From positions 186,001 to 250,000 of the IMG/VR virus record IMGVR_UViG_3300047476_002078: a stretch of DNA of 64,000 nucleotides. One strand, given 5' to 3'. Below the pieces are notes generated by a model. The model was not told the DNA's origin. It searched no databases and saw nothing but the letters and a program-made list of their open reading frames with translations. Both the position numbers and the translations under genes were made by a program. This document shows, piece after piece, positions 11,051 to 58,861 of this stretch (its first letter is position 1; each line of letters opens with the position of its first letter).

Positions 11051-11069
11051 ATTTTTACCTTTATAGAAA

Positions 11070-11300: not shown

Positions 11301-11302
11301 AA

Positions 11303-16329: not shown

Positions 16330-16592
16330 TGTTTGGTAATATCCCAGAAGAAGTTTTAAATGCAATAGTTCCAGATGTTGATAGTGAAACTACACTGAGA
16401 CAACATCTGGAGTTTTTCAATGCTGAAATTGATGTAGCCTTGTGGCAAACAGAGTATTCTGATTATTTATCACGTTTAGTTTTAAAAGAATTTATCGCTT
16501 GGTCTAAAGATTATATCTATCTTCAAAGCATGAATGTTTTTGGAGAGACTATTTTAAAAATACCTAAAAATCCACCACAAATATCAGAATAA
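16329..16592 (+). CDS. Hypothetical protein
   Basis: 87-aa ORF coupled by TAATG overlap. Confidence 0.5.
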   Translation: MFGNIPEEVLNAIVPDVDSETTLRQHLEFFNAEIDVALWQTEYSDYLSRLVLKEFIAWSKDYIYLQSMNVFGETILKIPKNPPQISE

Positions 16593-17501
16593 ACTTTCGA
16601 TTGTTGCCATCCACTTCTTAGTTATTTCACAAGTTTTATAATATTGAACTGCTTGATTACCGTTCTCAATAATTTGTTTGTGGTTTATGTCTGAAAGCTT
16701 TTTTAAAATATCTGTAACGTCTTCAAAGCTGTGGTACAGGTATCCATTAACAGCGTGATCTATTGTGGCTCTATAAGAAGGAATTGGCGAAGCTAATGGT
16801 ATCAAGCTGTTTGCCCAAGAAGTAACGACTTTGATTACGCTTTTATTGACACCTGTAACAAAATCATGAGCACAAATAGCTACATGACACTTTCTGTATT
16901 CATCTAGCCACCAATAAGGATTGCCTCCATAATCATCCTCTTCTCTGAAATAATCTCTGCCATCATTGGGGTATCCTATGACTTTAAAATCCCATCCAGC
17001 TTCTTCTACATGTTTACGATACATGTTAGCTAGTTGTGGATTACCTCCACTGTAAACGGCTGTTAATTTTTCATGTTTCTTTGGATAATTAGAGCAATCG
17101 TAAAAAACATCATCGGCAGGGTCATCTATATGAACACATTTACCTAGTTTATGTGTAGTCTCTGTGTGATAAGCAAGCATTGGGCTTACACATATAACAA
17201 AGTCCACAAGAGAAAATATTTCTTTCTGATACGGAAAAGAAAATATACTCTCCATGTGGTGAAAGAAAGTTTTTATTCCAGCATCTTTACATTTTTTAAC
17301 TGTTTGAAGAGTTATCTCATCAACAGAGCAGAAAATGACAGCATTGAGTTTATTATCAAAAATTTCATTTGGATGACTTACTATAAAAGACTGCCACCCC
17401 AATAAGTTCATATTACTATGAACGAAATTTTTAATTCTTAGGTTTGGGTCTTTTAAATTGAAGATGCTTGCACCAAACATCCACCCTATTTTTCTAAACA
17501 T
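16584..17501 (-). CDS. Glycosyltransferase (GT-B, GT4-like)
   Basis: Start moved to 17501 (TGATG overlap). KVVTSWANSLIPLASPIPSYRATIDHAVNGYL is a typical GT4 C-terminal motif. Confidence 0.75.
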   Translation of the reverse strand: MFRKIGWMFGASIFNLKDPNLRIKNFVHSNMNLLGWQSFIVSHPNEIFDNKLNAVIFCSVDEITLQTVKKCKDAGIKTFFHHMESIFSFPYQKEIFSLVDFVICVSPMLAYHTETTHKLGKCVHIDDPADDVFYDCSNYPKKHEKLTAVYSGGNPQLANMYRKHVEEAGWDFKVIGYPNDGRDYFREEDDYGGNPYWWLDEYRKCHVAICAHDFVTGVNKSVIKVVTSWANSLIPLASPIPSYRATIDHAVNGYLYHSFEDVTDILKKLSDINHKQIIENGNQAVQYYKTCEITKKWMATIESLF

Positions 17502-18091
17502 CAAATTAAACCAAGACGCTTTCTTTCTTGCGTCCAAAAATCAGGTTTTACTACTCTGATATGATATTTTATTTCATCTACCACGTTCCAATATCTATGT
17601 CTGGCAATCTGTTGTTCTTCCTCTGACCTATTTTCTAAATATTTAAAATCCGGAAAATAGCCAAACTCTATTTTTTCAACTTCTACTGTGCATAGAATCC
17701 ATGTTTCAGAAATACTCCCTTTCCTTACTAGAGTGTTACCGCAAGGTTTGTGAGTTCCGCTAAAGAAGCTAAAGGCGTATTCATTAAATCTATTATTGAT
17801 ATGGAATGGGTTAGCTATAGTGTGATGAGAATGAGCATAAGGGACTTTAATGAGCCATTTAGCGTCAGGCTTACTTACTCTATACATTTCTTCCAAGCAA
17901 TGAACATAGCCTTTTACAGGGTCTAAATGTTCTAAGCAATGCGAACTATAAATTTCATCAACAGAATCGTTTTCAAAAGGTAATTTATCTACGTTGAAAT
18001 CCATCACATGATTTACTTTTGGATGAACCAAGCAATCAATATTGAAATAACCTTCTAGCGGAATAGGACCGCCTCCAATTTCTACTTTCAC
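17501..18091 (-). CDS. Class I SAM-dependent methyltransferase
   Basis: VEIGGG motif I, GYFNID, LPFENDSVDEIYSSHCLEHL, RVSKPDA. Confidence 0.85.
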   Translation of the reverse strand: MKVEIGGGPIPLEGYFNIDCLVHPKVNHVMDFNVDKLPFENDSVDEIYSSHCLEHLDPVKGYVHCLEEMYRVSKPDAKWLIKVPYAHSHHTIANPFHINNRFNEYAFSFFSGTHKPCGNTLVRKGSISETWILCTVEVEKIEFGYFPDFKYLENRSEEEQQIARHRYWNVVDEIKYHIRVVKPDFWTQERKRLGLI

Positions 18092-19377
18092 ATTAGCTCC
18101 TGTACGATTGCAAACCCGTTGCCTTCTTTAAATTCAAAATAGGATTTATTCTTTTTATACTCATTAAAGAAATTTTTATTGTCTTCTTGAGTATTGCTAA
18201 TAAGAAGCAATCCACCTTTTTTGAGTTTTGATAAAGCTACTCTTAGGTCTGTTGGATTTGTTTCTCTAACAACATGAATTAAATCATACTGTTCGTCAAA
18301 ACCCAAAACACTTTTAGAAAAGTTTTGATAAGTTTTATTAGTTTCTTTTAATGGATGTTCGCTATACGAGGATATTTTAGAATTAGAACCGCTTTTTAAT
18401 AGTGCTTCGCACATTGTATAATATAACTGCCCCTGATTTGTCCCTAGTTCTAAAATATTTATGTTTTCACTTTTTGCTTGTAGGTAAATAAGATTGAAAA
18501 CTGTGTCTATTAAATGTTTTGTAGGCTCAAACCATTTTAACCAGTTCAAGTCAAAAGATGTTTTAAAACATTCTATTTTTTTAAGAAGTTTTTCTAATTC
18601 GGAGTCAGGGTATATATCACAAGATTCTAATTGATAATTTGATTTATCTATAGAAATAGCTTTTTTAAAAGATGCTGTATTAGACTGATTTGGATGTAAA
18701 TTTTCCATCTCTTCATTCCATTTAAGCCAAACATCTTTATACCAAGATTCCATTGAAGGGTCAGCATGAGAAAAGGTTCTTATTTTTCTCAGCATAGACT
18801 CATCACTTCTGACGTAACTATAATGATGACAAATTAAATCTTGAGGAAAAAAGGTGTACCATTTCCCTCTTGTGATAATAGCTCTAGCCTCATTGAAATA
18901 AAGTAAGTCTTGCTCTGTACTAGCAAAAGAAGGTAAAGCTGCTACAGTATTACTTATACAATGCTTTGTATCTTTCCAATAAACTTGGTGCGGTGATAGA
19001 TAAACCGAAAAATCCTGCTTGAAAACTCTTTCATGTAATTGGTTTTTTAAATCAGCATAATTATACATCTCGTCGTCATCAATTATAAAATTCCACTGAA
19101 TACCTTGTTCCCGACATCTTTTTAAACCAAAATTTCTTTGTTCTGCTTCAGACTTCCAGTATCCTGAAACGACCTCAATTTTATGGTGAGGGTCATACAT
19201 CTTTAAAATGTCGGAATAAGTTTGTTCGACAATTTTGTAATCACCTTCACCATTCCAAGGCTTGAAATTTAAGAGAAAAAGAATTTTATCCATCAATGGG
19301 TAAACTCTTCTTACGGACTCGGCTAAAAAACCAGAATTTTCATATACACAATATACGGCGGCTACTTTTTGCATCAT
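18088..19377 (-). CDS. Glycosyltransferase family 2-like domain fused to a methyltransferase-like domain
   Basis: N-terminal GT-A pattern (VYENSGFL, QRNFGL, IIDDDE DxD, HHYSYVR); C-terminal ILELGTNQG, YDLIHV and LKKGGLLLI. Confidence 0.7.
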   Translation of the reverse strand: MMQKVAAVYCVYENSGFLAESVRRVYPLMDKILFLLNFKPWNGEGDYKIVEQTYSDILKMYDPHHKIEVVSGYWKSEAEQRNFGLKRCREQGIQWNFIIDDDEMYNYADLKNQLHERVFKQDFSVYLSPHQVYWKDTKHCISNTVAALPSFASTEQDLLYFNEARAIITRGKWYTFFPQDLICHHYSYVRSDESMLRKIRTFSHADPSMESWYKDVWLKWNEEMENLHPNQSNTASFKKAISIDKSNYQLESCDIYPDSELEKLLKKIECFKTSFDLNWLKWFEPTKHLIDTVFNLIYLQAKSENINILELGTNQGQLYYTMCEALLKSGSNSKISSYSEHPLKETNKTYQNFSKSVLGFDEQYDLIHVVRETNPTDLRVALSKLKKGGLLLISNTQEDNKNFFNEYKKNKSYFEFKEGNGFAIVQELM

Positions 19378-40847: not shown

Positions 40848-40863
40848 TTAAAAAGAATATGAA

Positions 40864-40874
40864 ATTACGGTAAA
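40864..40874. promoter_or_regulatory. ATTAC-G-GTAAA palindrome variant upstream of polA
   Basis: Lies in the 39-bp intergenic gap; one mismatch to TTTACSGTAAA. Confidence 0.35.
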
Positions 40875-40886
40875 AAAAGCAAGAAC

Positions 40887-41612
40887 TCAAAATGCCATAA
40901 AAATAAACGCACCGTTTCTTTTATTCTTTTCATCCATGCGACTAAACAAACAGTCCTGTTCATTAAAGTACATAATTGGAGATTTATTTGGTGTGGCATA
41001 AAGAACATTGAAAGATAATAAGAACTGTTTACCGTAACATTTAAAGATCGGAGATTGTAACGGTATTTTCAAAAAACCTTTTTCATAATTTTCAGATAAA
41101 GATACTTTCCCAACACGTAAAAGTTTTTGGCTTAAAGTATCATAAAGATTATAAGACAGTATCGCATTGTGTCTTAGAGCGTCTTCAGTTTTTATCTTTA
41201 TTTTTATCTCTTCTAAAGTGGGTTTAAAGTAATCGAAAACTTGACCGAATTTTTTATCTTTAGTAAGAAGGTATTCTAATTCTCCATGAGGCTGGTAACA
41301 TCCTAAAATTGATGGGATGTCGGGGGTTTTATTCCAAAATTCTTCAATCAAACGGTATGCTTGTGTGAGAGGGTCTGGAAATTCGTTTATAAATTTGTAT
41401 TTATTGGTATCTTTGTTCAAAAGTATCTTATCACAAAAATATTTCTCAGCTTGGTCAAAACCGTCAGGAAGTAGTAAGCAAAAGTCGTATAAAGAGCTAT
41501 CTAAAAAATCTTTATAGAAATACTGTTTGGTGATAACACGACTTTTTAAGTTCAAGTAAATTGGATGGTTTTCATATTCACGTTTAAAATAAACGAAAGC
41601 TAATTTAATCAT
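40887..41612 (-). CDS. Hypothetical protein
   Basis: 241-aa ORF between the GT cluster and polA. Confidence 0.55.
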   Translation of the reverse strand: MIKLAFVYFKREYENHPIYLNLKSRVITKQYFYKDFLDSSLYDFCLLLPDGFDQAEKYFCDKILLNKDTNKYKFINEFPDPLTQAYRLIEEFWNKTPDIPSILGCYQPHGELEYLLTKDKKFGQVFDYFKPTLEEIKIKIKTEDALRHNAILSYNLYDTLSQKLLRVGKVSLSENYEKGFLKIPLQSPIFKCYGKQFLLSFNVLYATPNKSPIMYFNEQDCLFSRMDEKNKRNGAFIFMAF

Positions 41613-42399
41613 TTAAAACCTCTATCCAATCTACTGCTCTATTGTAGTTCAAATGATTTTTTAAAACGTAATCTCTAGTTATTTGAGAAATATATTCAAA
41701 AGATTCTGGAGATACCTTATAAAACTCTAAGAAGTCTTCTAATTCATTGTGTTTAGAAGGTCTAAAAAATTCTTTATAACTTAAAGGTATGTCGAACTGA
41801 CTGTATATTTTTTCAAATTCGTTTTCTATTTCTGGAGTGCTTAATGAAATAACAGGTATTTTTCTAACCCAAGCTTCAAAAAGTGCTTTTAAGTTTGTCG
41901 CAAGTACAAAATCCGCTTTATATTCATAAGTAAATTCAAAATTTAAGTTTAATTCTTTGGCATCTTCTAACGAATCGGTACATACAAAAATTTTTTTACC
42001 TTTTAAAAATTTTTTACAATCTTGGAGAAGTTTAACATCTTCTTTAAAACCTACCCACAAGCAAGTATTTAACTCTAAATTTTTTGATTTTCTAGGAACT
42101 CTGTAATCAACTCCATAATTAAAATTACGTTGATTTTTAAAAGTTTTAATATACTTTTCTGATAGACCGTCTATGAAAATTTTGTTTGTTTTTTGCCTAA
42201 GTATCAAATCAATATTTTTATCAATTAGATCAGAGGATATTACTAGATGGGAATAATTACCAAAAGGTATAAAAGACTCTGCTGAAACACCTTCAAAGGT
42301 ATTTAAAATTTGGACAAGGCTACTGAGACGTTGGTAGCTTTTAGACATTTTTTCAGATTCAAACCAAATACCTATTTTCATTCTAATAATTTTGACCAC
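41605..42399 (-). CDS. Divergent GT-B-like glycosyltransferase
   Basis: ADFVL...EAWVRKIPVISL and YVLKNH...RA..W resemble the GT-B C-terminal domain; inside the sugar cluster. Confidence 0.5.
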   Translation of the reverse strand: MVKIIRMKIGIWFESEKMSKSYQRLSSLVQILNTFEGVSAESFIPFGNYSHLVISSDLIDKNIDLILRQKTNKIFIDGLSEKYIKTFKNQRNFNYGVDYRVPRKSKNLELNTCLWVGFKEDVKLLQDCKKFLKGKKIFVCTDSLEDAKELNLNFEFTYEYKADFVLATNLKALFEAWVRKIPVISLSTPEIENEFEKIYSQFDIPLSYKEFFRPSKHNELEDFLEFYKVSPESFEYISQITRDYVLKNHLNYNRAVDWIEVLND

Positions 42400-43394
42400 T
42401 TTTCATAAAACTTGTTCGTTGAAAATTTTTTCAACATGGTTTTTCTAGCGTTATAACCCATTTCGATAGCACGTTCAGGATTTGCAAGAAGATATATTGC
42501 ATAGTTTCTGAGTTCATATACATTGTTGCTGTAAAAACCATTATAACCGTTTTTAATTACCTTAGATTCACCAAAATAATTTGTGGTAACAGGCACACTT
42601 CCTAAAAGCATCGACTCATATAAGTTATGATGCCAAGGTTCTCTGACATGAGTATTTAAGTAACAACTGTATTGACCTATGAAATCCAAATAATCATAAA
42701 AATTTATGATAGATTTCTCATTTGAATTTTCTTCAATTGAAGGGGGAGTTATTTCTTTTGCTATCCCTATTGGGTCTTTTCCTATAACTTCCACGCCTAA
42801 ACCTAAGCAAACTTTGTCGAATATTTTATATCCAGAGTATTGAGGATTCGTTGCCAAGAAAGGAGAAACGCTTACAAATTTACTCTTAGTTTTTGGAACA
42901 TAAGGATAATGTTGATAAGATAAGGTGGGTTCTATTATCAAAGAATTTTTGAAATTCCATTTACTTTGGGCTTCAAAGTTTGGAAATATAACCAAATCAT
43001 CTTGAATAAAATCTTCTAACTCTTTTTTTGCTTCTTGGTCTATTTTTAAATTATCTTCAAAATAAAAATCTGGCTCAAATCTTCCTTCAAGAGCAGGAAC
43101 GCCGTGGCATACAAAAACTTTTTTAATAGGGATTTTTGCTAATTTTCTAAAAACTTCTCCAAAATCACTTCTAACATTTTTTCCGGGATTTAAAACCATT
43201 TCGTTAAAATGAAGAACAAAAGCTTTATAGTTTTTAAGATCAATGTCTTCTATTTTTACAACTTTACAATTTTCGGAAAAAGGTCGAGCAGAATGGTTCC
43301 AAGGAAAAACATTAGGAAGATCAAGGTAATGGAATTGCCCTATTTTGTTTAACTCATATTGATAAATCACGTTCCATCGGTAAGTTAAATACAT
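42378..43394 (-). CDS. Glycosyltransferase family 4-like
   Basis: YESMLLGSVPVTT, IKNGYNGF, MGYNARK...KFS..F.EKW. Confidence 0.85.
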   Translation of the reverse strand: MYLTYRWNVIYQYELNKIGQFHYLDLPNVFPWNHSARPFSENCKVVKIEDIDLKNYKAFVLHFNEMVLNPGKNVRSDFGEVFRKLAKIPIKKVFVCHGVPALEGRFEPDFYFEDNLKIDQEAKKELEDFIQDDLVIFPNFEAQSKWNFKNSLIIEPTLSYQHYPYVPKTKSKFVSVSPFLATNPQYSGYKIFDKVCLGLGVEVIGKDPIGIAKEITPPSIEENSNEKSIINFYDYLDFIGQYSCYLNTHVREPWHHNLYESMLLGSVPVTTNYFGESKVIKNGYNGFYSNNVYELRNYAIYLLANPERAIEMGYNARKTMLKKFSTNKFYEKWSKLLE

Positions 43395-44227
43395 TTTCCC
43401 AAGTAGCTTGCTAGATGTTCATCCCATGAATACATCGGAGCTTGCTCTTTCTCCATTTTTGTTACATCAAGAACTCCGAACTTAGGTCTTTTCGCAGGTC
43501 TTGGAAACTCTTCTGAGTTACAAGGAATAACTTCTACTTTTTTGTTTTTAAGAATCTCTTTAGCAAAATCATACCAAGAACAGTAATCTGAAGCCCCTAA
43601 ATGAAAGCACCCTTTAGCATTGTTTGTTACTAAATAATGAATCGCCTTTGAAAGTAAAAACGTGCTTGTAGGTCTTCCAAACTGATCGTTTACTACTTTT
43701 ATTACTTTATTTTTTTCTGCAATTTTTAACATAGTATCAACAAAATTAGGTCCGTTTATTCCAAAGAGCCACTGAACTCTTAAAAGTAAATAATCTAGCC
43801 CTTGCTCGTTTTCTAAAGCAAGTTCACCCAAAAATTTTGAATGACCATAATGATTTATTGGCGATCTCTCGTCATTTTCCTTGTAGAAAGAAATAGAGTT
43901 GCCGTCAAACACGTAGTCTGTACTAAAATGAACGAACTTAGCTTTTATTAAATTACTATACTTTGCTAAGTAATGAACCGCAGTTGAATTTACTTTGTAA
44001 CAAGTAGGGTCTATTTCACAGTTATCTACTTTAGTGAAGGCAGCACAATTCACTACAATGTTTGGTCTAATTTGTAGTAAAGCTGTTTCAACTTCTTTTT
44101 TATTTGTAATGTCTAGCTGACTTTTATCAAAAGCATATACGTTAGCATCTCCAAATAAAGGGATTAAATCCCTTGCTAACATTCCGTTTGAACCTGTAAA
44201 AAGAATTCTTGTCTTGTTCATTTCCAC
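43385..44227 (-). CDS. rmlD: dTDP-4-dehydrorhamnose reductase
   Basis: GSNGML, VVNCAAFTKVD, STDYVFDG, YGHSK (YxxxK), V.DQFGRPT, RPAKRP...LD. Confidence 0.93.
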   Translation of the reverse strand: MEMNKTRILFTGSNGMLARDLIPLFGDANVYAFDKSQLDITNKKEVETALLQIRPNIVVNCAAFTKVDNCEIDPTCYKVNSTAVHYLAKYSNLIKAKFVHFSTDYVFDGNSISFYKENDERSPINHYGHSKFLGELALENEQGLDYLLLRVQWLFGINGPNFVDTMLKIAEKNKVIKVVNDQFGRPTSTFLLSKAIHYLVTNNAKGCFHLGASDYCSWYDFAKEILKNKKVEVIPCNSEEFPRPAKRPKFGVLDVTKMEKEQAPMYSWDEHLASYLGKCI

Positions 44228-45180
44228 ACAGCCTTATAATTTTCTTCTAACCAAATCCAATTTTCTTTGTACCATTTAACGGTTTTTTCAAGACCTGTTC
44301 GGATGTCAACTTGTGGTTCCCATCCAAGTTTTTTAATTTTCGAGCAGTCCACACTGTATCTAAAGTCATGCCCTTTTCGGTCTTCTACAAAGTTTATCGA
44401 ATACGATTTATTTAAAATACCGCCCAAAATGCTGATAATGGATAGATTTGATTTTTCATTTTCAGAACCTACATTGTAGGTTTCCCCAATAATGCCTTTT
44501 TCGGCTACTACTCTAACTGCTCTTGCAGCGTCTTCTACAAACAACCACTCTCTAATATTTTGCCCTGTACCGTAGATAGGCAAGTCTTTTTCTGTTTCTA
44601 TTAAATACATCATTCGTGGTAATAATTTTTCTGGTAATTGTCGAGGACCGTAGCAATTAGATGGGCATATATTAACTACAGGTAGATCAAATGTTTCTTT
44701 AAATGCGTTAGCGAAGAGAAGCTGAGAAGCTTTTGAAGCTGAGTAGATATTCCTCGGATTAATTGGGGTATCTTCAGTAAAACTTGAATCTTCTCTTTTA
44801 AGATGACCGTAAACTTCATCGGTTCCAAAATTAACAATTTTCGGCACTTTATATTGAAGGCATACTTGAAATAGATTAGCAGAGCCTAGAATATTAGTCA
44901 TAATAAAGTCTTCGTAACCTTTAATTGATTTATCAACTGAAGATTCTGCGGCAGCGTGAATTACTAAATCAAAACACCCATGCTCAACGAAAACATCTTT
45001 TATATCTTCTATATTTTTTAAATTTCCTTGAAAGAAAGTACAATCTACTTCATTCAAATGTTGTTTAAAACCGCTATACTCTAGGCTATCAAAAACTACT
45101 GTTTTGTATCCAGCATTTACAAACTCTCGAACTACTTGAGAGCCTATAAATCCACACCCTCCTGTTATAAGAACCTTCAT
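44218..45180 (-). CDS. rmlB: dTDP-glucose 4,6-dehydratase
   Basis: GGCGFIG, HAAAESSVD.SI, GTDEVYG, YSASK, SNCYGPRQ.PEKL, REWLFVED, DRKGHD.RY. Confidence 0.93.
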   Translation of the reverse strand: MKVLITGGCGFIGSQVVREFVNAGYKTVVFDSLEYSGFKQHLNEVDCTFFQGNLKNIEDIKDVFVEHGCFDLVIHAAAESSVDKSIKGYEDFIMTNILGSANLFQVCLQYKVPKIVNFGTDEVYGHLKREDSSFTEDTPINPRNIYSASKASQLLFANAFKETFDLPVVNICPSNCYGPRQLPEKLLPRMMYLIETEKDLPIYGTGQNIREWLFVEDAARAVRVVAEKGIIGETYNVGSENEKSNLSIISILGGILNKSYSINFVEDRKGHDFRYSVDCSKIKKLGWEPQVDIRTGLEKTVKWYKENWIWLEENYKAVWK

Positions 45181-46044
45181 TTATACTCTCCACTTATCTA
45201 ATTTTTTTATGTGTTTTTTTAATTCATCTTTTATTTCTTCAGAATTTTTTTCGATTAGTCCTTCAGCTTTTGTTTTTGAAAAAGGTAATGCTAAGTCTAA
45301 CGAAAAGTGTTTATCAAAACGCTCTTTGTATTTATCTTTATTAGCGTGAATAAAATTAGCCCCATTAAGAAGTGTTTCAGGCGAGCCTAAATCTGTCCAG
45401 TATCCTTTTAAAAGACCCCAATTAAGATTTTGCTGATCGTGATAATGCTGAATAATGTCAGTAACTTCTAGTTCCCCTCTATTTGAAGGTTTCAAAGTCT
45501 TGATAATATCAAAAACATCTTTATCGAAAATATAAGCTCCTACAATTGCTAAATTAGATTCTGGATTTTTTGGTTTTTCTACAATTTTTGTAATTTTACC
45601 ATCAACAACAGTTGCCACGCCGTAAGCGGAAGGGTCTGTGACTTCTTTTAGAAGAACCTTTCCTCCGCCTTTATAATCTTTAACGAAATCAGTTAAATCA
45701 TCTTCAAATAAGTTATCCCCAAGAATGACACATACAGGTTTACCTTCAGCGAAAGGTTTAGCACATCTTAGGGCATCACCGATTCCACCTTCACCATACT
45801 GTCGAGCATAGTTTAGAGATTTAAGACCAAATTCACGACCATTTCCTAGATAATCCATAGTGTCTCCACTATGTCTTCCTCCAGTAACAATAACCACTTC
45901 ATCAATCCCTGCTTCCACTAAACTTAGAAGAGGATAGTCCATCATAGGTCGGTTATAAACATAACATAAATGCTTGTTTGTTATTCTATGAGTGTAGTAA
46001 CCCATTCTTGTTCCTAATCCACCAGATAAAATAACACCTATCAT
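45181..46044 (-). CDS. rmlA: Glucose-1-phosphate thymidylyltransferase
   Basis: ILSGGLGTR, TNKH..VY.RPM, Q...GGI.DA, ILGDN.F, EKP..P.SNLA..G.Y, PS.RGELE.TD, W.DLG. Confidence 0.93.
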   Translation of the reverse strand: MIGVILSGGLGTRMGYYTHRITNKHLCYVYNRPMMDYPLLSLVEAGIDEVVIVTGGRHSGDTMDYLGNGREFGLKSLNYARQYGEGGIGDALRCAKPFAEGKPVCVILGDNLFEDDLTDFVKDYKGGGKVLLKEVTDPSAYGVATVVDGKITKIVEKPKNPESNLAIVGAYIFDKDVFDIIKTLKPSNRGELEVTDIIQHYHDQQNLNWGLLKGYWTDLGSPETLLNGANFIHANKDKYKERFDKHFSLDLALPFSKTKAEGLIEKNSEEIKDELKKHIKKLDKWRV

Positions 46045-46060
46045 AAAAATCCTCCGTAAA

Positions 46061-47200
46061 TTATTTAATGTTCAAAACTGAATTATAAGCGTTCATCCAA
46101 AGGTTTACATTGTTTGAAATGTTATAATCTTTCAAAGCAGTTAAATAACCGTTTTCAGCTAAAAACCCTTGTTGAATTGGATTTTGAATAATTAACTTTA
46201 AATGCTTGTACCAATCTTCTGCAATGCCGTCAGAGTTTAAATCATTAGAGCAAAGATAACCATTTATGCCATGAGTGATTGTTTTTGAATAATTTTCAAC
46301 TTTTGATGCAATTACTGACGCTTTCAAGGCAAAAGACTCTATAACTTTAAGATTGCTTTTTGCTCTGTTAAACGGGAGTTCAACTATCGGGCACACTGAA
46401 ATAGTCGGACCTATTTTTATTAAAGTGTGTAAAACTCCGTGAAAATTATTAACTGCAATAGGGTCAACAATGACTAATTGATCTGGAATATCCTTCATGT
46501 AATCTAAAAATTCGGCAGTACAGCACCCAACTTTCATGATAATTAATTCTGGGTTTTCATGAGCTAAGAGAGCTAACGTCTTATCTACTATTTTTAAATC
46601 TTCCCGATGTGTAGGTGAACCCCACCACATGATTTTTAATTTACCTTTTAGTTTACGCATAACTTCATCTTGAGGCAAAACTTGATTAGTTTTGTTTCGA
46701 GATAAAATATTTTTTGGGTCTTTGAACACTATATACTTATAAAAATGATCGGAAGGCAGTCCTGAGAAATTTTTTATCTGCTCTATGTCCATACTGTTCG
46801 GTAAAACAAATATGTTTGGATTAAGAGCTAAATTAACCTTTCTAAGATAATCTGTTGTGACTGTGCAAGCGTCACAATTTTTTATAAAATTTATTATCTT
46901 TTCTTTTTTATCTTTATAAAAACTGTGAGCAGAATTCCATTCTGGTATTTCAGTCATTAAATCATCAAATTCTAAAATAACAGGCTTGTTTAATGATTTT
47001 GCAATCTCAATATACGGAAAAACACTATCTTGGTACTGCTTTTGTATGATGATAATGTCTGCCCATTCCAATTCTTCTTTATCGTACTTAAAAGATATAC
47101 GAGCAGTAACATTAGGAATTTTATTCAAATATTTAAAAGGTATTTGAAGTCTAAACAGACCACACCCATCAAATCCTGAAATGTATCCTAATATTTTCAT
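46061..47200 (-). CDS. Glycosyltransferase (GT-B, phage type)
   Basis: GCGLFRL..PF, E.DDL, CD..TVTT.YL, V.PNS, WWGS.TH..DL, FNRAKSNLK..E, ASKV..YS. Confidence 0.85.
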   Translation of the reverse strand: MKILGYISGFDGCGLFRLQIPFKYLNKIPNVTARISFKYDKEELEWADIIIIQKQYQDSVFPYIEIAKSLNKPVILEFDDLMTEIPEWNSAHSFYKDKKEKIINFIKNCDACTVTTDYLRKVNLALNPNIFVLPNSMDIEQIKNFSGLPSDHFYKYIVFKDPKNILSRNKTNQVLPQDEVMRKLKGKLKIMWWGSPTHREDLKIVDKTLALLAHENPELIIMKVGCCTAEFLDYMKDIPDQLVIVDPIAVNNFHGVLHTLIKIGPTISVCPIVELPFNRAKSNLKVIESFALKASVIASKVENYSKTITHGINGYLCSNDLNSDGIAEDWYKHLKLIIQNPIQQGFLAENGYLTALKDYNISNNVNLWMNAYNSVLNIK

Positions 47201-47262
47201 TTTTTCTCATTGCATTAAATAAATTTTTATCTTTTTAACTATAATAGCAAAGAAGAGGTTTA

Positions 47263-47490
47263 ATGAAATCTTTTTTAATTGCAAATTTGAATGATCTGGA
47301 AACCTTGAAAGGTTCGAGTGTTAAAGATTTAACTGTTATTGCTAAAAGACTTGAGGATGTTCTTGTTACGGATTTTTTTAATTTTCCTGAAAGAAGTATT
47401 ACCGTAAATTTTAATCCTTTAAATGGTCGTATATCTTTAGAATTTTGTCTTAAAAACAATGAGTTTTTGGCTATAGGTGACAAGGAATGA
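47263..47490 (+). CDS. Hypothetical protein
   Basis: GAGG RBS; TATAAT at 47240-47245; lies in the gap between two minus-strand genes. Confidence 0.5.
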   Translation: MKSFLIANLNDLETLKGSSVKDLTVIAKRLEDVLVTDFFNFPERSITVNFNPLNGRISLEFCLKNNEFLAIGDKE

Positions 47491-47591
47491 AAAAATTACT
47501 TTTTTTAGGTCTTGTTATCAGTGTCATAATTTTTAAAGGTTTTGCTATTGAAAGTTGTGAGAAAATAAAAAGTAAATTCAAAAAAGGTTAG
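47487..47591 (+). CDS. 34-aa membrane peptide (not in the ORF track)
   Basis: ATGA overlap with the previous stop; MKKLLFLGLVISVIIFKGFAIESCEKIKSKFKKG; AAGGA upstream. Confidence 0.5.
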   Translation: MKKLLFLGLVISVIIFKGFAIESCEKIKSKFKKG

Positions 47592-48237
47592 CTATTTTAT
47601 TTTTATCTGTATTTTCTTTATAACCGAATCTACATATTAAACTGTATCTTTCAATGTCAGCATTTAGTTTATTTACTTTATGGCAAAATATAGGAACTAC
47701 GTTACATATCGACACAAGCACTCCATGAACAGGTAATACTTCACCTGTTTTAATAACACTTGATGCTATGCCCCATCCGTTATTATCTAAATTCCATTTA
47801 CCTAGTTCTAAGTGACCTCCCCAGTCTAAGTTCCAAACCTTCTGGGTTGTTAAATATAAAACATTGGTAATGTGTACACCTTCATGCACATCTTGATGCC
47901 AATTTAATCCTGTTCCTTGATTATACTTATGTAGCATTACATTGAATTGACTGAATTCACCGTAAATTAAATTAAAGTAATCAAAGTAAGGCTCTTGTGA
48001 AAGTTTTTTCCAAAAATTTAAAAATTCACTAGGAACAATATTATCAGATGTTTTATTACTGTAGCCTGTATCCCAAATAGGAATAAGAGGGTTTGTATCA
48101 ATTAGCTGTGATTCTCTGTTGAATTTTTCTTGGAAAACAAGGTTTAGAAGTTTATCACTTTCGATCTCATCTAAATAATTAACAGTGAAGCCTTTTGTAA
48201 AATACTCTTCAATATTAAATTGTTTATTTTTTAACAT
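47578..48237 (-). CDS. 2OG-Fe(II) oxygenase (prolyl-4-hydroxylase-like)
   Basis: WHQD (HxD), VLYLT..W...WGG.LEL, distal HKV and 2OG-binding R (ERYSL). Confidence 0.85.
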   Translation of the reverse strand: MLKNKQFNIEEYFTKGFTVNYLDEIESDKLLNLVFQEKFNRESQLIDTNPLIPIWDTGYSNKTSDNIVPSEFLNFWKKLSQEPYFDYFNLIYGEFSQFNVMLHKYNQGTGLNWHQDVHEGVHITNVLYLTTQKVWNLDWGGHLELGKWNLDNNGWGIASSVIKTGEVLPVHGVLVSICNVVPIFCHKVNKLNADIERYSLICRFGYKENTDKNKIANLF

Positions 48238-48763
48238 TTAAAATCTCTTGAGCTTTTAACTTGACTTTATCAATCAATTCAAAGTTATTATTTTTAAAAG
48301 CGTCATCTAAAACGTATAAGAGCTTTGAATATTTCTCTAAGCCTATTTCCTTTTTCTTATCAATCAAAAATTTTTCGGTTCTATTGAATTCATACTCGAT
48401 AGAAACTTTTGGTTTTTCTATTTCATCTGAAAATATTTTTTCAACTTCTTCTTCAACTTCTTCTAGTTTGGGTATGTTGTACTTTTGTTCTAAAGCTCTT
48501 AAAGCATTTGGTAGTTTTTCTATATGCTCTTTTTCTTGAAAGAAAGAAATAACATCAAAGTGCCTATGACAAGCAAAACAATGAAAGTGCCCTTCTGCAT
48601 ATACGTGAGCCGATGGAGTGTTGTCTCTTCCATGAAAGGGACAACGCATTTGGAACTCATCTCCGACGTATTGATTAGGAAGTAGTCCGTAGTCTTGTAT
48701 TAAACTTCGTATTTTTACACGACTTTTTATGTTATCTATACGTTTTTTTAATAGATCACTCAC
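48224..48763 (-). CDS. Stand-alone CHC2 zinc finger (DnaG primase zinc-binding domain)
   Basis: CPFH..D.TPS..V....FHCFAC....DVI.F; no TOPRIM domain. Confidence 0.85.
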   Translation of the reverse strand: MSDLLKKRIDNIKSRVKIRSLIQDYGLLPNQYVGDEFQMRCPFHGRDNTPSAHVYAEGHFHCFACHRHFDVISFFQEKEHIEKLPNALRALEQKYNIPKLEEVEEEVEKIFSDEIEKPKVSIEYEFNRTEKFLIDKKKEIGLEKYSKLLYVLDDAFKNNNFELIDKVKLKAQEILNVKK

Positions 48764-50268
48764 AAGCTTGCTTCAACTACTTTTCCTAGAGGTACATCAT
48801 AGTGGTCAGCGTTAAACCAAATTCTACCACAAGATAAAGCAGTTTCTCCTATGAAAGGTTTAAAAATGGCTCCATGTCTGTTTTTGATACAACCTATATG
48901 AATTGTATTACTATCTCTCAATTCTTGGTTTAGGTAAGTGTAAATAACGTAATCTGCCGATCTTTCAGCTTCGTTGGCGTAAGATAAATGGAAGGTGTTA
49001 TAAACAGGTTTATCAATATCTTTAAAGGATTTGCTTTCTCCTTCTTTCTCTGTTCTTTTAACAACATCTTTTTTACCTTCACGGTTAATTTGGAAAGGGC
49101 ATAGCATTGCTACTCCTTCATTACCGTTAAAGGTCAGAGCTAAGTTTTTTAGCTTCTTCATGATCTGGTTGAGTGCTGCACCTTCATTCATATTCTTTGA
49201 ATGGTCGTCAGGAATCATTAGTCCGGGGTAATCCACAATAACTAAATGTATTGGAGCGATTCTATTAAAGTAGTTTAATTTTGCAGCCAACAGAGTTGGA
49301 GTCAATTCTGAGTTAGGTTCCCACACAGTAAAGTTTCCGTATGGAACAGTTTTATCTTTTCTTGTAGCTCCTCTCAATGACCAGTCTGTAAGAGCGAACT
49401 TGTACCAAAATTCTTGCCTTGGTGACATTTCTCCGTTCTTTATCTCATCACGAGTCATAGTAATATCGCAGTTATTTTCTCTTTGTAGAACTGGATTGTT
49501 AGCATGAATACAATAAAGAATATCTTCAAGGTTCTCTTTGGACATTTCGAGAGTTACGTATAGAACATTAAATCCGCCTTGTACGCAGGCATTATAAGCC
49601 CAGTTTATTGCGAGAGTTGTTTTACACTCACCTACGGAGCCAGCGATCAACATCATCTCTTTTCGCTTGATACCTTTGACATTGACATCAATTTCTCTCA
49701 ATCCACTAAGAATACCGTAATTTGCTAAAGAGTTTTCTTTGGCTGCTAAATAACGCTCGTAAGCAGTATTAGTTGCTTTAGAAAGTTCTACTTCTGTTTT
49801 TTCTTGCAAAGATTGATAGTAAAACTGTTCAGAATTTTCAATCACATAATCAAGAGCATCTTTTGTTCCTTTAAGGAGTCTTTTACCGATTTTAAATTCT
49901 TGATTGTTAATATCATTAGCTTCTTTTAAAACCTTGTTAAAAGATTTTCTGTGAAGTTCAGTGATACACTCTTTTATGATAAACTTAAAACCTGAGCCTG
50001 TATGAAGAGGGTAATTTTTTAAGTCTTCTAATTCGTCTTTTTCATCGAGCATGGCTCGTGAAACAAACTCTTCTTGTAAAAAATTAACAGTAGGGTAATC
50101 GTTTAGATCATTGTAATAGCTTTTAATAAAATCATATACGTTCTGTAAGGAAGAACTAACTTCTTTAAAGTTTACAGGACTATCCAATACTAAAAAAGCA
50201 TTGTCAGCTAGATTATCATTTTCGTTAATTCTAATTAAGCATCTTAAAAATCTTCTTGCTACTTCCAT
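48760..50268 (-). CDS. dnaB: DnaB-like replicative helicase
   Basis: Walker A variant GSVGECKT, VTLEM, IVDYPGLM, FQINREG, AERSAD, KNRHG. Confidence 0.88.
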   Translation of the reverse strand: MEVARRFLRCLIRINENDNLADNAFLVLDSPVNFKEVSSSLQNVYDFIKSYYNDLNDYPTVNFLQEEFVSRAMLDEKDELEDLKNYPLHTGSGFKFIIKECITELHRKSFNKVLKEANDINNQEFKIGKRLLKGTKDALDYVIENSEQFYYQSLQEKTEVELSKATNTAYERYLAAKENSLANYGILSGLREIDVNVKGIKRKEMMLIAGSVGECKTTLAINWAYNACVQGGFNVLYVTLEMSKENLEDILYCIHANNPVLQRENNCDITMTRDEIKNGEMSPRQEFWYKFALTDWSLRGATRKDKTVPYGNFTVWEPNSELTPTLLAAKLNYFNRIAPIHLVIVDYPGLMIPDDHSKNMNEGAALNQIMKKLKNLALTFNGNEGVAMLCPFQINREGKKDVVKRTEKEGESKSFKDIDKPVYNTFHLSYANEAERSADYVIYTYLNQELRDSNTIHIGCIKNRHGAIFKPFIGETALSCGRIWFNADHYDVPLGKVVEASL

Positions 50269-58857: not shown

Positions 58858-58861
58858 TATT

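What the first reader, a model, noticed from the sequence alone, without database searches (positions are those of the whole stretch)
41605..48237. Phage-encoded deoxysugar synthesis, three glycosyltransferases and a hydroxylase embedded in the replication module
rmlA-rmlB-rmlD are flanked by three GT-B enzymes and a catalytically intact 2OG-Fe(II) oxygenase, between polA and primase-ZBD/dnaB. With the second cluster the window holds five GTs and two MTase domains. Hypotheses: (a) virion glycosylation, known in some mycobacteriophages and in giant viruses with their own sugar pathways, possibly on hydroxylated residues; (b) DNA hypermodification by an oxygenase-then-GT route, favoured by the genomic position although the oxygenase looks prolyl-hydroxylase-like rather than TET/JBP-like; (c) remodelling of host surface polysaccharide. 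A self-supplied rhamnose-type, methylated glycan system in a bacteriophage is the strongest candidate for an undescribed system here.
Basis: partly seen in the sequence, partly recalled or inferred. Interest (0 to 1): 0.72.

Follow-up and report, generated by a model that had tools for sequence, protein, structure and literature searches.

The report
Jumbo phage rhamnose glycosylation gene cluster
A 356-kb freshwater jumbo phage carries its own genes for making the sugar donor dTDP-rhamnose, plus three sugar-transferring enzymes, inside its DNA-replication module; they most likely decorate a giant threonine-rich collagen-like virion fibre rather than the phage DNA.

Summary
On the minus strand, 41605-48237 encodes GT264, GT338, RmlD, RmlB, RmlA, GT379 and an intact P4H/Tpa1-like 2OG-Fe(II) oxygenase, between PolA and the primase zinc-ribbon/DnaB.

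The window belongs to a 355,874-bp freshwater jumbo phage. The cluster is old and conserved: relatives keep the same gene order at 44-66% protein identity, and the nearest named cellular RmlB homologues reach 48% or less.

It is only part of a much larger glycosylation apparatus:
- RmlC sits about 210 kb away, beside two more GTs, a DegT sugar aminotransferase and thymidylate kinase.
- The genome holds about a dozen GT genes.

A 3,082-aa collagen-like gene (885 Gly-X-Y triplets, Thr every sixth residue, almost no Pro, TNF/C1q/BclA-like C-terminal head) is flanked by two large GT genes, one fused to TPR repeats. That adjacency recurs in three genomes.

Best reading (about 0.5): the cluster supplies dTDP-L-rhamnose and GTs for O-glycosylation of this fibre, as with Bacillus BclA or Mimivirus fibrils.

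DNA hypermodification is disfavoured. The only thymidylate-synthase homologue is a canonical ThyA, there is no TET/JBP enzyme, and there are no T4-type DNA GTs.

The oxygenase is one of about eight paralogues and is missing from one syntenic relative, so an oxygenase-then-GT route is unsupported.

The parts
40887..41612 (-). 241-aa conserved ORF of unknown function between the GTs and PolA. The C-terminal half is predicted to be a beta-sandwich. Whether it belongs to the system is uncertain.
   Evidence: No Pfam or PHROG hit. Atlas structure matches of TM about 0.5 to extracytoplasmic domains of GT-C-type proteins, a lead only. 24% identical counterpart at the same position in L044.
41605..42399 (-). 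GT264: compact GT-B (GT4-like) glycosyltransferase, fast-evolving.
   Evidence: Atlas structure matches to GT4 clusters, TM 0.70-0.78 over residues 7-264. Weak PF13524 hit of 15.9 bits. No tblastn-detectable counterpart in relatives, although an ORF of similar size occupies the same position.
42378..43394 (-). GT338: GT-B glycosyltransferase (GT1/GT4 clan).
   Evidence: PF00534 at 31.3 bits against a cut-off of 26.4. PDB sequence matches to TarM and TreT C-terminal domains. About 32% identical orthologues at the same position in L019, L044 and L045.
43385..44227 (-). RmlD, dTDP-4-dehydrorhamnose reductase.
   Evidence: PF04321 1.2e-83. TIGR01214 equivalog, 266 bits against a cut-off of 224.
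44218..45180 (-). RmlB, dTDP-glucose 4,6-dehydratase.
   Evidence: Best NCBIfam match TIGR01181, 328 bits (cut-off 365). Falls in a viral clade at 55-97% identity; nearest named cellular homologues are 48% or less.
45181..46044 (-). RmlA, glucose-1-phosphate thymidylyltransferase.
   Evidence: PF00483 3.4e-43. All 21 PDB matches at E<=1e-20 are G1P thymidylyltransferases, best 3hl3 at 2.3e-54. Below the NCBIfam equivalog cut-offs.
46061..47200 (-). GT379: the best-conserved GT of the cluster (50-58% identical in relatives), GT-B/GT4-like.
   Evidence: phrog_7162 glycosyltransferase 1.1e-29. Sub-threshold PF00534 and PF13692. Homologues in Phapecoctavirus, Justusliebigvirus and actinophage GTs. 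Conservation.
47201..47577 (.). 377-nt spacer between the oxygenase and GT379. Relatives have about 30 nt here. It contains a doubtful 82-aa ORF (pI 10.6).
   Evidence: No Rfam match. No promoter or terminator excess.
47578..48237 (-). 219-aa 2OG-Fe(II) oxygenase, P4H/Tpa1/OGFOD1-like DSBH with an intact HxD...H...R. It is an accessory neighbour whose substrate is unknown.
   Evidence: PF13661 and PF13640. Invariant H114, D116, H186, R197. AF2 model pLDDT 86.5. Foldseek top hits are Tpa1/OGFOD1, then P. putida P4H, PolD and AlkB/ALKBH3. One of 8-9 paralogues. Absent from L044 and G002.
16584..17537 (-). 317-aa weak GT-like ORF of the 'second cluster', next to the head-morphogenesis genes.
   Evidence: PF00534 E=0.16 and 12.5 bits. 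Its 59% identical orthologue in G001 lies next to the collagen/GT locus.
17501..18091 (-). 196-aa SAM-dependent methyltransferase (candidate sugar O- or N-methyltransferase).
   Evidence: PF08241 at 30.1 bits against a cut-off of 21.2. 75% identical orthologue in G001 beside the collagen/GT locus.
18088..19377 (-). 429-aa conserved ORF of unknown function, co-linear with the MTase.
   Evidence: No Pfam, PHROG or PDB match. 47% identical orthologue in G001 at the same relative position.

Best explanation
The cluster is the nucleotide-sugar supply arm, with three glycosyltransferases, of a genome-wide phage-autonomous glycosylation system. Its most probable product is an O-linked rhamnose-containing glycan on a virion protein, above all the giant collagen-like fibre.

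Proposed route:
1. RmlA makes dTDP-glucose from glucose-1-phosphate and dTTP.
2. RmlB dehydrates it to dTDP-4-keto-6-deoxyglucose.
3. RmlC, encoded about 210 kb away, epimerises it, and RmlD reduces it to dTDP-L-rhamnose.
4. The same 4-keto intermediate can be diverted by the DegT-type aminotransferase of the second sugar locus to an amino-dideoxyhexose.
5. The soluble GT-B enzymes of the cluster act with the GT2-TPR and triple-domain GTs beside the fibre gene and with a SAM methyltransferase. Together they build the glycan on the regularly spaced Thr residues of the (G-X-T)(G-V-Q)n triple helix, which ends in a trimeric TNF/C1q/BclA-like head.

Shown: the gene identities, pathway completeness, conserved synteny, GT-collagen adjacency and the fibre's architecture.
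Inferred: the acceptor, the sugar specificity of each GT and the timing.

The adjacent oxygenase is probably an independent accessory enzyme, not an obligatory step.
For: Pathway:
- Pathway identity is established.
- The pathway is complete only with rmlC at genome 17946-18575. That gene sits beside a GT2-like gene, a GT1-like gene, thymidylate kinase and a 694-aa GT17-like/DegT aminotransferase fusion. The cluster is therefore functionally tied to other sugar loci.

Scale:
- The genome carries about a dozen GT genes. That is far more than any described DNA-glycosylation pathway uses.

The fibre:
- The collagen-like ORF is 3,082 aa with 885 GXY triplets, 407 Thr and 431 Gln in the Y position, and 3 Pro there.
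- The same hexad is kept in G001 and in the distant G002 while X varies.
- The C-terminal domain model (pLDDT 89.6) matches TNF-like trimeric lectins at TM 0.76, exosporium ExsFA/BxpB, BclA-CTD and C1q (Atlas lead).
- It lies at the end of a Baseplate_J / tail-fibre-network module. Its C-terminal-domain homologues occur in phage contigs.

Linkage:
- GT492 (GT2+TPR) and GT783 (three GT domains) are divergently adjacent to the fibre gene.
- The arrangement is conserved in G001 at 57-61% identity and, for the GT492 type, in G002 at 32%.
- In G001 the window's 'second cluster' (GT-like, MTase, 429 aa) abuts this locus.
- In G002 the GT492/GT783 homologues abut an NTP-transferase, dehydratases, a DegT aminotransferase and Tmk.

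Other points:
- None of the 14 proteins analysed, from PolA to SNF2 and including every cluster gene, shows a membrane-helix-like segment.
- The cluster is an old resident. Synteny is kept at 44-66% identity, and cellular RmlB homologues reach 48% or less.
- phi92-like phages carry a related RmlA and GT and a 'putative dTDP glycosylation machinery', yet are exceptionally RM-sensitive (PMC8594841). This argues that such machinery need not serve DNA protection.
Against: - There is no biochemical or proteomic evidence. The acceptor is inferred from gene neighbourhoods in three related genomes that are not independent.
- The cluster is not next to the fibre gene. It lies within the replication module and is co-directional with PolA, DnaB and the primase zinc ribbon, with no intervening promoter or terminator signal. 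That placement is conserved. It suggests early or middle expression, which is what one would expect for a DNA-modifying function.
- The three cluster GTs carry no recognisable protein-binding domain.
- G002 has collagen and GT genes but only distant RmlA/RmlB-like genes (24-31% identical), and no RmlD homologue was seen in the stretches examined. Rhamnose as such is therefore not tied to the fibre.
- GT-B DNA glycosyltransferases of RB69 and DLP3 also look like generic GT4 enzymes (PMC13326640), so fold cannot discriminate between the two roles.
Confidence: 0.5

Rival explanations
1. DNA hypermodification. The oxygenase hydroxylates a base in phage DNA (for example 5mC made by the phage C5-methyltransferases, or T), and the cluster GTs attach rhamnose from self-made dTDP-L-rhamnose, protecting the DNA from restriction enzymes.
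For: - The cluster is embedded in, and co-directional with, the replication genes, and that placement is conserved across relatives.
- The oxygenase gene overlaps the primase zinc-ribbon gene.
- AlkB and ALKBH3 are among the fold matches, TM about 0.5-0.56.
- The genome has three C5-DNA methyltransferases.
- There is precedent for phage-made sugar nucleotides plus GT-B enzymes acting on DNA (PMC13326640; bioRxiv 10.1101/2023.12.21.572611).
- In Phapecoctavirus, four GTs also sit next to primase/helicase and PolI.
Against: - The only thymidylate-synthase homologue is a canonical ThyA, 456 bits against a cut-off of 327. There is no nucleotide-level hydroxymethyl or hydroxy pyrimidine route.
- No Tet_JBP match passes the cut-off. 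The best is 13 bits, in another gene.
- The top fold matches of the oxygenase are protein prolyl hydroxylases.
- The oxygenase is acidic, pI 5.8, and is one of 8-9 paralogues.
- It is absent from the otherwise syntenic L044 cluster.
- The C5-MTases lie about 150 kb away with no GT beside them.
- No T4 AGT or BGT family member is present.
- About a dozen GTs plus an aminosugar branch exceed what any known DNA glycan needs.
- phi92-like phages with comparable machinery are RM-sensitive.
Confidence: 0.13
2. Remodelling of the host cell surface during infection. The phage boosts or alters rhamnose-containing LPS, capsule or cell-wall glycans to block superinfection or to stop progeny re-adsorbing to infected cells. 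This is what has been proposed for the sugar clusters of cyanophages and other jumbo phages.
For: - Iyer et al. interpret NDP-sugar plus multi-GT clusters in jumbo phages as capsule/O-antigen diversification systems (PMC7824862).
- Early or middle co-expression with the replication genes would fit host takeover.
- GT338 and GT264 evolve fast, as expected for surface-glycan diversification.
- Soluble GT4 enzymes commonly act on lipid-linked intermediates.
Against: - The phage genome has no initiating phosphoglycosyl transferase (Bac_transf or WecA-type) and no Wzx flippase.
- None of the cluster proteins has a membrane segment.
- This reading does not explain the conserved adjacency of GTs, including a TPR fusion, to the collagen-like gene.
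- The phage appears lytic. The only integrase-like ORF is a 184-aa fragment-sized gene.
Confidence: 0.15
3. The cluster glycosylates other targets, such as the capsid or tail proteins of the virion as in mycobacteriophages, or a soluble host or phage protein or small molecule. On this reading the collagen-like fibre is served only by its own adjacent GTs.
For: - The second GT/MTase cluster abuts the head module (TerL, portal) in the window.
- Actinophage GTs are the best full-length phage matches of GT379.
- The fibre gene has its own dedicated GTs.
Against: No specific alternative acceptor could be identified. The shared need for RmlC and the links between loci seen in G001 and G002 argue for one connected system.
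Confidence: 0.15

Closest known systems
Bacillus anthracis/cereus exosporium glycoprotein BclA with its rmlACBD operon (established knowledge, from memory; the structural matches to BclA-CTD, ExsFA and BxpB are)
   Same: - A collagen-like triple helix of G-X-T repeats whose Thr residues carry rhamnose-containing O-glycans.
- A C-terminal trimeric TNF/C1q-like head.
- A dedicated dTDP-L-rhamnose pathway and GTs encoded with it.
   Different: - Here the carrier is a bacteriophage, not a spore.
- The fibre is about ten times longer: 885 triplets here, and 6,593 aa or more in G001.
- The repeat is a G-X-T/G-V-Q hexad with no Pro.
- The C-terminal domain is only 20% identical to BclA-CTD (TM 0.55) and is closer to TNF-like lectins.
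- The rml genes are split over two loci, one of them inside the replication module.
- Glycosylation has not been demonstrated.
Autonomous glycosylation of giant viruses: Mimivirus fibrils (rhamnose, viosamine) and the PBCV-1 capsid (review PMC4691112; details from memory)
   Same: - Virus-encoded nucleotide-sugar pathways (6-deoxyhexose plus an aminotransferase branch), many GTs including multi-domain ones, and methyltransferases.
- Co-occurring collagen-like proteins and hydroxylases.
- A virion surface target.
   Different: - The host is bacterial.
- The donor is dTDP-linked (bacterial Rml type) rather than UDP-L-rhamnose.
- The collagen-like repeats lack the Lys and Pro that Mimivirus L230-type hydroxylation uses.
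- There is no evidence that the oxygenase takes part.
Mycobacteriophage virion glycosylation (Freeman et al. 2023, as cited in PMC12619734)
   Same: Phage-encoded GTs decorate virion structural proteins with O-glycans.
   Different: - Those phages use host sugar nucleotides and one or two GTs adjacent to the capsid or tail genes.
- Here there is a self-supplied deoxysugar pathway, about a dozen GTs and a collagen-like acceptor candidate.
Phage DNA sugar hypermodification: T4 glucosyl-5hmC, RB69/DLP3 arabinosyl-5hoC (PMC13326640), and C5-MT + 5mYOX/TET + GT gene clusters (bioRxiv 10.1101/2023.12.21.572611)
   Same: - GT-B enzymes and, in some cases, phage-made sugar nucleotides.
- Location among replication and nucleotide-metabolism genes.
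- A formal oxygenase-plus-GT logic.
   Different: - No thymidylate-synthase-type hydroxylase, no TET/JBP oxygenase, no adjacent C5-MTase and no AGT/BGT homology.
- The oxygenase is dispensable in a relative.
'Putative dTDP glycosylation machinery' of phi92-like and phAPEC8-like E. coli phages (PMC8594841)
   Same: - Homologous RmlA (about 38% identical) and a GT of the same PHROG.
- In Phapecoctavirus nieznany a four-GT block sits directly upstream of primase/helicase and PolI.
- Its function is likewise unknown.
   Different: - I did not look for a full Rml set, a collagen-like fibre or an oxygenase in those phages.
- Their genomes are about 150 kb.
- They are experimentally RM-sensitive.
LPS/capsule-modification clusters of cyanophages and other jumbo phages (PMC7824862)
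   Same: NDP-sugar enzymes, several paralogous GTs, 2OG-Fe(II) oxygenases and methyltransferases in large aquatic phages.
   Different: That interpretation (host surface) is itself untested. Here GTs are physically linked to a virion fibre gene, and no lipid-carrier machinery is present.

Membership tests
dTDP-L-rhamnose biosynthesis (RmlABCD) | RmlA, glucose-1-phosphate thymidylyltransferase | tested here: met
   PF00483 3.4e-43. All 21 PDB hits at E<=1e-20 are G1P thymidylyltransferases. It falls below the NCBIfam equivalog cut-offs (202 against 320), so the dTTP versus UTP preference is not proven.
dTDP-L-rhamnose biosynthesis (RmlABCD) | RmlB, dTDP-glucose 4,6-dehydratase | tested here: met
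   Best NCBIfam match TIGR01181, 4.8e-98, 328 bits, slightly under the 365 cut-off. Sources name its homologues dTDP-glucose 4,6-dehydratase.
dTDP-L-rhamnose biosynthesis (RmlABCD) | RmlC, dTDP-4-dehydrorhamnose 3,5-epimerase | tested here: met
   Not in the cluster. It is present at genome 17946-18575: PF00908 2.4e-55, and TIGR01221 at 183 bits against a cut-off of 156.
dTDP-L-rhamnose biosynthesis (RmlABCD) | RmlD, dTDP-4-dehydrorhamnose reductase | tested here: met
   TIGR01214, 266 bits against a cut-off of 224.
GT-B glycosyltransferases (GT1/GT4 clan) | Sequence or fold match to the two-Rossmann GT-B architecture in all three cluster GTs | tested here: met
   GT338 passes the Pfam threshold. 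GT379 is sub-threshold in Pfam but matches phrog_7162 at 1e-29. GT264 is supported only by Atlas structure, TM 0.70-0.78. Donor and acceptor specificity cannot be tested with these tools.
2OG-Fe(II) oxygenase superfamily (P4H/PHD/Tpa1 branch) | DSBH fold with the HxD...H iron triad and a 2OG-binding Arg | tested here: met
   PF13661 and PF13640 above their cut-offs. H114, D116, H186 and R197 are invariant. The AF2 model matches Tpa1, OGFOD1 and P4H.
Collagen prolyl/lysyl hydroxylase system | A collagen substrate with Pro or Lys in the X/Y positions | tested here: not met
   Of 885 triplets, only 3 have Pro and 2 have Lys in Y, and 8 have Pro in X. The relatives' repeats are likewise T/Q in Y.
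TET/JBP (5mYOX) DNA dioxygenases | Match to the Tet_JBP family | tested here: not met
   The best PF12851 hit in the whole genome is 13.1 bits (cut-off 34.9), and it lies in a different gene. No TET or JBP structure appears among the top 50 fold matches.
Phage DNA sugar-hypermodification pathways | A source of a hydroxylated pyrimidine: a thymidylate-synthase-homologue hydroxymethylase or 5hoC synthase, or a C5-MT plus 5mYOX pair next to the GTs | tested here: not met
   There is a single thymidylate-synthase homologue and it is a canonical ThyA. The C5-MTases lie at 76.7-82.8 kb, about 150 kb from the cluster, with no GT beside them.
Phage DNA sugar-hypermodification pathways | Modified bases in virion DNA | not testable with these tools
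   Needs LC-MS of nucleosides or native-DNA long-read signal.
BclA-like glycosylated collagen-like fibre | A G-X-T collagen repeat followed by a C-terminal trimeric TNF/C1q-like domain | tested here: met
   (PF01391 6.9e-46). There is no direct Pfam BclA_C hit, so this is resemblance in fold and architecture, not demonstrated homology.
BclA-like glycosylated collagen-like fibre | Genetic linkage of the fibre gene with GTs and sugar genes | tested here: met
   GT492 and GT783 are adjacent in G000 and G001, and a GT492-like gene is adjacent in G002. The rmlC sugar locus lies 12-18 kb downstream.
BclA-like glycosylated collagen-like fibre | O-glycans actually present on the Thr residues | not testable with these tools
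   Needs virion glycoproteomics.
Lipid-linked surface polysaccharide (O-antigen/capsule) pathway | An initiating phosphoglycosyl transferase and a flippase | tested here: not met
   PF02397, PF00953 and PF01943 give no match at E<=1 in the genome. Host enzymes could substitute.

The most novel reading that the evidence does not exclude
The P4H-like oxygenase is a new kind of DNA base hydroxylase, unrelated to TET/JBP, and the cluster GTs attach L-rhamnose from phage-made dTDP-rhamnose to the hydroxylated base. That would be a deoxyhexosylated DNA base made post-replicatively inside the replication module. A less radical but still new reading is my best explanation itself: a bacteriophage with a sub-micron to micron-long collagen triple-helix fibre, densely O-rhamnosylated by a giant-virus-like autonomous glycosylation system.
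Probability: 0.1. Interest if true: 0.85.

Novelty: new variant of a known kind. Interest (0 to 1): 0.62.

Why it matters
Virus-autonomous glycosylation with self-made sugar nucleotides is a hallmark of giant eukaryotic viruses. In phages, virion glycosylation has been shown in mycobacteriophages that carry one or two GT genes; their use of host sugar donors is my recollection, not something I checked.

If this reading holds, a lineage of freshwater jumbo phages would combine:
- a full dTDP-rhamnose pathway;
- an aminosugar branch;
- about a dozen GTs;
- a methyltransferase.

All of this would serve to coat a collagen-like fibre. From 885 triplets at the textbook rise of 0.286 nm per residue, that fibre would be about 0.76 µm long, and more than twice that in a relative.

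This would give a bacterial-virus counterpart to Mimivirus fibrils and the Bacillus exosporium nap. It would suggest glycan-stabilised, proline-free collagen as a general solution. It would also provide candidate rhamnosyltransferases and a testable function for the 'dTDP glycosylation machinery' noted but unexplained in phi92-like phages.

It is also a caution against inferring DNA modification from position in a replication module alone.

Tried and rejected
- Megablast of the cluster and tblastn of the oxygenase against GenBank phages gave no match. There is no cultured close relative.
- The IMG/VR scan with the oxygenase profile found only one other record.
- Context look-ups of more distant oxygenase homologues (P0012, P0014, P0016) returned contigs too short to be informative.
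- The fold search of the oxygenase could not separate protein-acting from nucleic-acid-acting enzymes decisively. Tpa1, OGFOD1 and P4H come first, but AlkB and ALKBH3 are close behind.
- Sequence searches of the GTs against the PDB gave only generic GT4 C-terminal-domain matches. DNA GTs of RB69 and DLP3 also look like generic GT4 enzymes, so fold is not a discriminator.
- The promoter/terminator scan showed fewer sites than shuffled controls, so no operon boundaries could be called.
- Rfam found nothing in 40800-48800.
- A second methyltransferase domain and a fifth GT in the window could not be confirmed.
- 'Recently captured, decaying host DNA' is rejected: GC matches the genome, all reading frames are intact, synteny is deep, and cellular RmlB homologues reach 48% or less.
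- Classical collagen prolyl or lysyl hydroxylation of the fibre is rejected on its composition.
- I did not run complex prediction. An enzyme with a repetitive substrate is a poor case for it, and a negative result would not be informative.
- I did not run read laying. Contig-level data cannot show DNA modification.

Full report
**What is there**

The window is bases 186,001-250,000 of a single 355,874-bp IMG/VR virus record. It has 34% G+C and five tRNAs, and IMG/VR classes it as having direct terminal repeats. It is a tailed jumbo phage:
- the window holds a clamp loader, the large terminase and the portal;
- the genome has a Baseplate_J module;
- the sequence recurs in freshwater and lake metagenomes from several studies.

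On the minus strand, 41605-48237 encodes a tightly packed, partly overlapping gene row. In order of transcription it reads:
- a 219-aa 2OG-Fe(II) oxygenase;
- a 377-nt spacer;
- GT379, RmlA, RmlB, RmlD, GT338 and GT264;
- a conserved 241-aa unknown ORF;
- PolA.

Upstream of the oxygenase lie the primase zinc ribbon, DnaB, a 282-aa unknown ORF and an SNF2 helicase.

The assignments stand as follows:
- RmlD passes the NCBIfam equivalog threshold.
- RmlB falls just short of it.
- RmlA matches only solved glucose-1-phosphate thymidylyltransferases.
- GT338 passes the Pfam GT1 threshold.
- GT379 matches a phage glycosyltransferase PHROG at 1e-29.
- GT264 is a compact GT-B by structure comparison only.
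- The oxygenase has an invariant HxD...H...R. Its confident model (pLDDT 86.5) is closest to Tpa1/OGFOD1 and bacterial P4H. AlkB-type enzymes follow close behind, and no TET/JBP structure is near the top.

Its count of five GTs and two MTases for the window is confirmed only in part.

**The cluster is resident, conserved and not self-contained**

The same order (SNF2, unknown ORF, DnaB, zinc ribbon, oxygenase, GT, RmlA, RmlB, RmlD, GT, two small ORFs, PolA) occurs in relatives from other lakes. Protein identities are 44-66%.

RmlB belongs to a clade of metagenomic sequences, many on contigs of 80-312 kb. Identity to named cellular enzymes drops to 48% or less. G+C matches the genome. Recent capture of host DNA is excluded.

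The pathway lacks RmlC within the cluster. A bona fide rmlC (TIGR01221 above its cut-off) lies about 210 kb away, at genome 17946-18575. It sits in a second sugar locus with:
- a GT2-like gene and a GT1-like gene;
- thymidylate kinase;
- a 694-aa fusion of a GT17-like domain, a lumazine-binding-like domain and a DegT/DnrJ/EryC1 sugar aminotransferase.

The RmlB product is the standard substrate of such aminotransferases (established biochemistry). The phage can therefore probably make an amino-dideoxyhexose as well as L-rhamnose.

Family scans of the whole genome find further GT genes:
- a 746-aa double GT2;
- a GT8;
- a weak GT2;
- two large GTs at 343-347 kb.

Together with those above, this makes about a dozen GT genes.

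**The probable acceptor**

The contig ends lie inside a 3,082-aa ORF made of 885 Gly-X-Y triplets, arranged as (G-[E/A/T]-T)(G-V-Q) hexads. The Y position holds 407 Thr, 431 Gln and 3 Pro.

Relatives G001 (ORF of 6,593 aa or more) and the distant, complete 470-kb phage G002 (3,078 aa) keep Thr and Gln in Y while X varies.

The last 132 residues have 19 homologues, one of them in a phage contig near holin and tail-tube genes. They fold with pLDDT 89.6 into a jelly roll. Its closest structural matches are:
- trimeric TNF-like lectins (TM 0.76);
- Bacillus exosporium ExsFA/BxpB;
- BclA-CTD;
- C1q.

The gene follows a Baseplate_J / tail-fibre-network module.

Two GT genes sit divergently beside the fibre gene: a 492-aa GT2 fused to TPR repeats, and a 783-aa protein with three GT domains. 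G001 has the same pair at 57-61% identity next to its collagen gene. It also has, right beside them, the orthologues of the window's second cluster (GT-like, methyltransferase, 429-aa ORF).

In G002:
- a GT492-like gene sits directly upstream of the giant collagen gene;
- further GT492/GT783 homologues lie in an island with an NTP-transferase, two 4,6-dehydratase-like SDRs, a DegT aminotransferase and thymidylate kinase.

Gene neighbourhoods in three genomes thus link the collagen-like fibre to GTs, to nucleotide-sugar enzymes and to the methyltransferase. The need for RmlC ties the finding's cluster to that network.

**Mechanism proposed**

I commit to the following route.
1. Shown by homology: RmlA, RmlB, RmlC and RmlD make dTDP-L-rhamnose.
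2. Inferred: the soluble GTs of the cluster and of the other loci assemble a rhamnose-containing, possibly methylated and aminosugar-bearing O-glycan on the regularly spaced Thr residues of the fibre.
3. From memory: this parallels Bacillus BclA, where the Thr of G-X-T repeats carries rhamnose oligosaccharides.
4. Established for annelid cuticle collagens, also from memory: glycosylated Thr replaces hydroxyproline in stabilising the triple helix.

A canonical helix of 885 triplets would be about 0.76 µm long. I put this explanation at about 0.5. A further 0.15 goes to other protein or small-molecule acceptors.

**The oxygenase**

Nothing ties the oxygenase to the sugars except adjacency.
- The genome has 8-9 paralogues of the same Pfam type scattered along it.
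- In this genome a 377-nt spacer separates it from GT379, whereas its reading frame overlaps the primase zinc-ribbon gene.
- L044 is closer to this phage in DnaB, PolA and RmlA than the other relatives. It keeps the whole Rml/GT row but has no trace of the oxygenase.
- G002 has the collagen and GT genes but no member of this oxygenase subfamily.
- The fibre offers no Pro or Lys to hydroxylate.

Its closest folds hydroxylate ribosomal protein S23 and EF-Tu. Action on a translation factor, on another phage protein, on a nucleic acid or on a nucleotide-sugar all remain open.

**Why not DNA**

Known phage DNA glycosylation needs a hydroxylated pyrimidine. It comes either from a thymidylate-synthase homologue or from a C5-methyltransferase/TET pair encoded with the GTs (PMC13326640; bioRxiv 10.1101/2023.12.21.572611).

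Here:
- the only thymidylate-synthase homologue is a canonical ThyA;
- nothing reaches the Tet_JBP threshold;
- the three C5-methyltransferases lie about 150 kb away without GTs;
- there is no T4-type alpha- or beta-glucosyltransferase.

The cultured phages that share a related RmlA and GT are the phi92-like and phAPEC8-like phages. In the phAPEC8-like phage nieznany, four GTs also sit next to primase/helicase and PolI. The phi92-like phages are reported to carry a 'putative dTDP glycosylation machinery', and the whole group is exceptionally sensitive to restriction-modification systems (PMC8594841). Position in a replication module is therefore weak evidence.

The position is nevertheless conserved, and AlkB-like folds are near matches. 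I keep this rival at 0.13.

**Why not the host surface**

Iyer et al. proposed capsule or O-antigen diversification for comparable clusters (PMC7824862). The phage encodes no initiating phosphoglycosyl transferase and no flippase, and no cluster protein has a membrane segment. This reading also leaves the GT-collagen adjacency unexplained. I keep it at 0.15.

**Novelty**

Each ingredient is known somewhere:
- Rml genes and GTs in phages, with unknown function;
- virion glycosylation in mycobacteriophages;
- autonomous glycosylation and collagen-like proteins in giant viruses;
- BclA in Bacillus.

The library searches found no description of a bacteriophage combining a complete dTDP-rhamnose pathway and about a dozen GTs with a giant Thr-rich collagen-like fibre. 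A recent paper on other large aquatic phages notes four core GT families without assigning a target (PMC12619734).

I classify the finding as a new variant of a known kind, of moderate to high interest. Its decisive tests are experimental: virion glycoproteomics and DNA nucleoside mass spectrometry.

Noticed in passing
outside the window: genome 347431-355787, continuing at 1-892 (L017:7431-15872 plus L002:2-892): A giant 3,082-aa collagen-like ORF with 885 GXY triplets in (G-X-T)(G-V-Q) hexads, almost no Pro, and a TNF/C1q/BclA-like C-terminal head. Relatives carry versions of 6,593 aa or more (G001) and 3,078 aa (G002).
   Followed up: yes
genome ends (first and last 87 bases): The 87-bp 'direct terminal repeat' that marks the record as complete lies inside the collagen repeat array. 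It may therefore be a repeat-induced assembly overlap rather than a true terminus, and the length of the array may be mis-assembled.
   Followed up: partly
outside the window: genome 343440-347256 (L017:3440-7256, minus strand): Two large GT genes lie divergently adjacent to the collagen gene: a 492-aa GT2 fused to TPR repeats, and a 783-aa protein with GT1-, GT2- and GT4/GT1-type domains. The arrangement is conserved in G001 and partly in G002.
   Followed up: yes
outside the window: genome 12570-18982 (L002): A second sugar locus holds a 694-aa fusion (GT17-like, lumazine-binding-like and DegT aminotransferase domains), thymidylate kinase, a GT2-like gene (PF13712), a GT1-like gene and RmlC. 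A RelA/SpoT-domain gene lies at 10820-11746.
   Followed up: partly
whole genome, e.g. 49364, 101115, 104227, 174292, 266232, 266825, 281241 (genome coordinates): Eight to nine PF13640-type 2OG-Fe(II) oxygenase paralogues are scattered over the genome. The one in the finding is not unique.
   Followed up: partly
outside the window: genome 76747-82834 (L006:747-6834): Three C5-cytosine DNA methyltransferase genes, with a 143-aa 2OG-FeII_Oxy_5 fragment-sized ORF between them. The phage DNA is probably 5mC-methylated at several motifs. No GT lies beside them.
   Followed up: partly
window 47201-47577: A 377-nt spacer separates the oxygenase from GT379, where relatives have about 30 nt. It holds only doubtful ORFs on both strands, has no Rfam match and shows no clear promoter or terminator.
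   Followed up: partly
window 20306-21795: An Amidoligase_2 gene (312 aa) is followed by a short (184-aa) Phage_integrase-family ORF. This is an unusual pair in an apparently lytic jumbo phage.
   Followed up: no
window 15907-16329 and 19431-19967: A ferritin-like/Dps-like ORF and an HD-domain ORF flank the second GT/MTase cluster, next to the head-morphogenesis genes.
   Followed up: no
window 55351-62323: Two consecutive ORFs of 1,168 and 1,153 aa lie upstream of the replication genes. A 1,167-aa counterpart of the first is called at the same position in relatives, with no Pfam hit on record. I did not examine them.
   Followed up: no
relative contig of JGI sample 3300059473: The PolA orthologue of the 345-kb relative is 1,248 aa and carries Hom_end/LAGLIDADG_3 domains within DNA_pol_A, which suggests an intein or homing-endonuclease insertion absent from this phage.
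   Followed up: no
L023 (Escherichia phage nieznany, NC_052659.1 88806-91950): Four annotated GT genes lie immediately upstream of primase/helicase, a Dam-type methylase and PolI. This is the same 'GTs inside the replication module' layout, in a cultured E. coli phage group reported to be RM-sensitive.
   Followed up: partly
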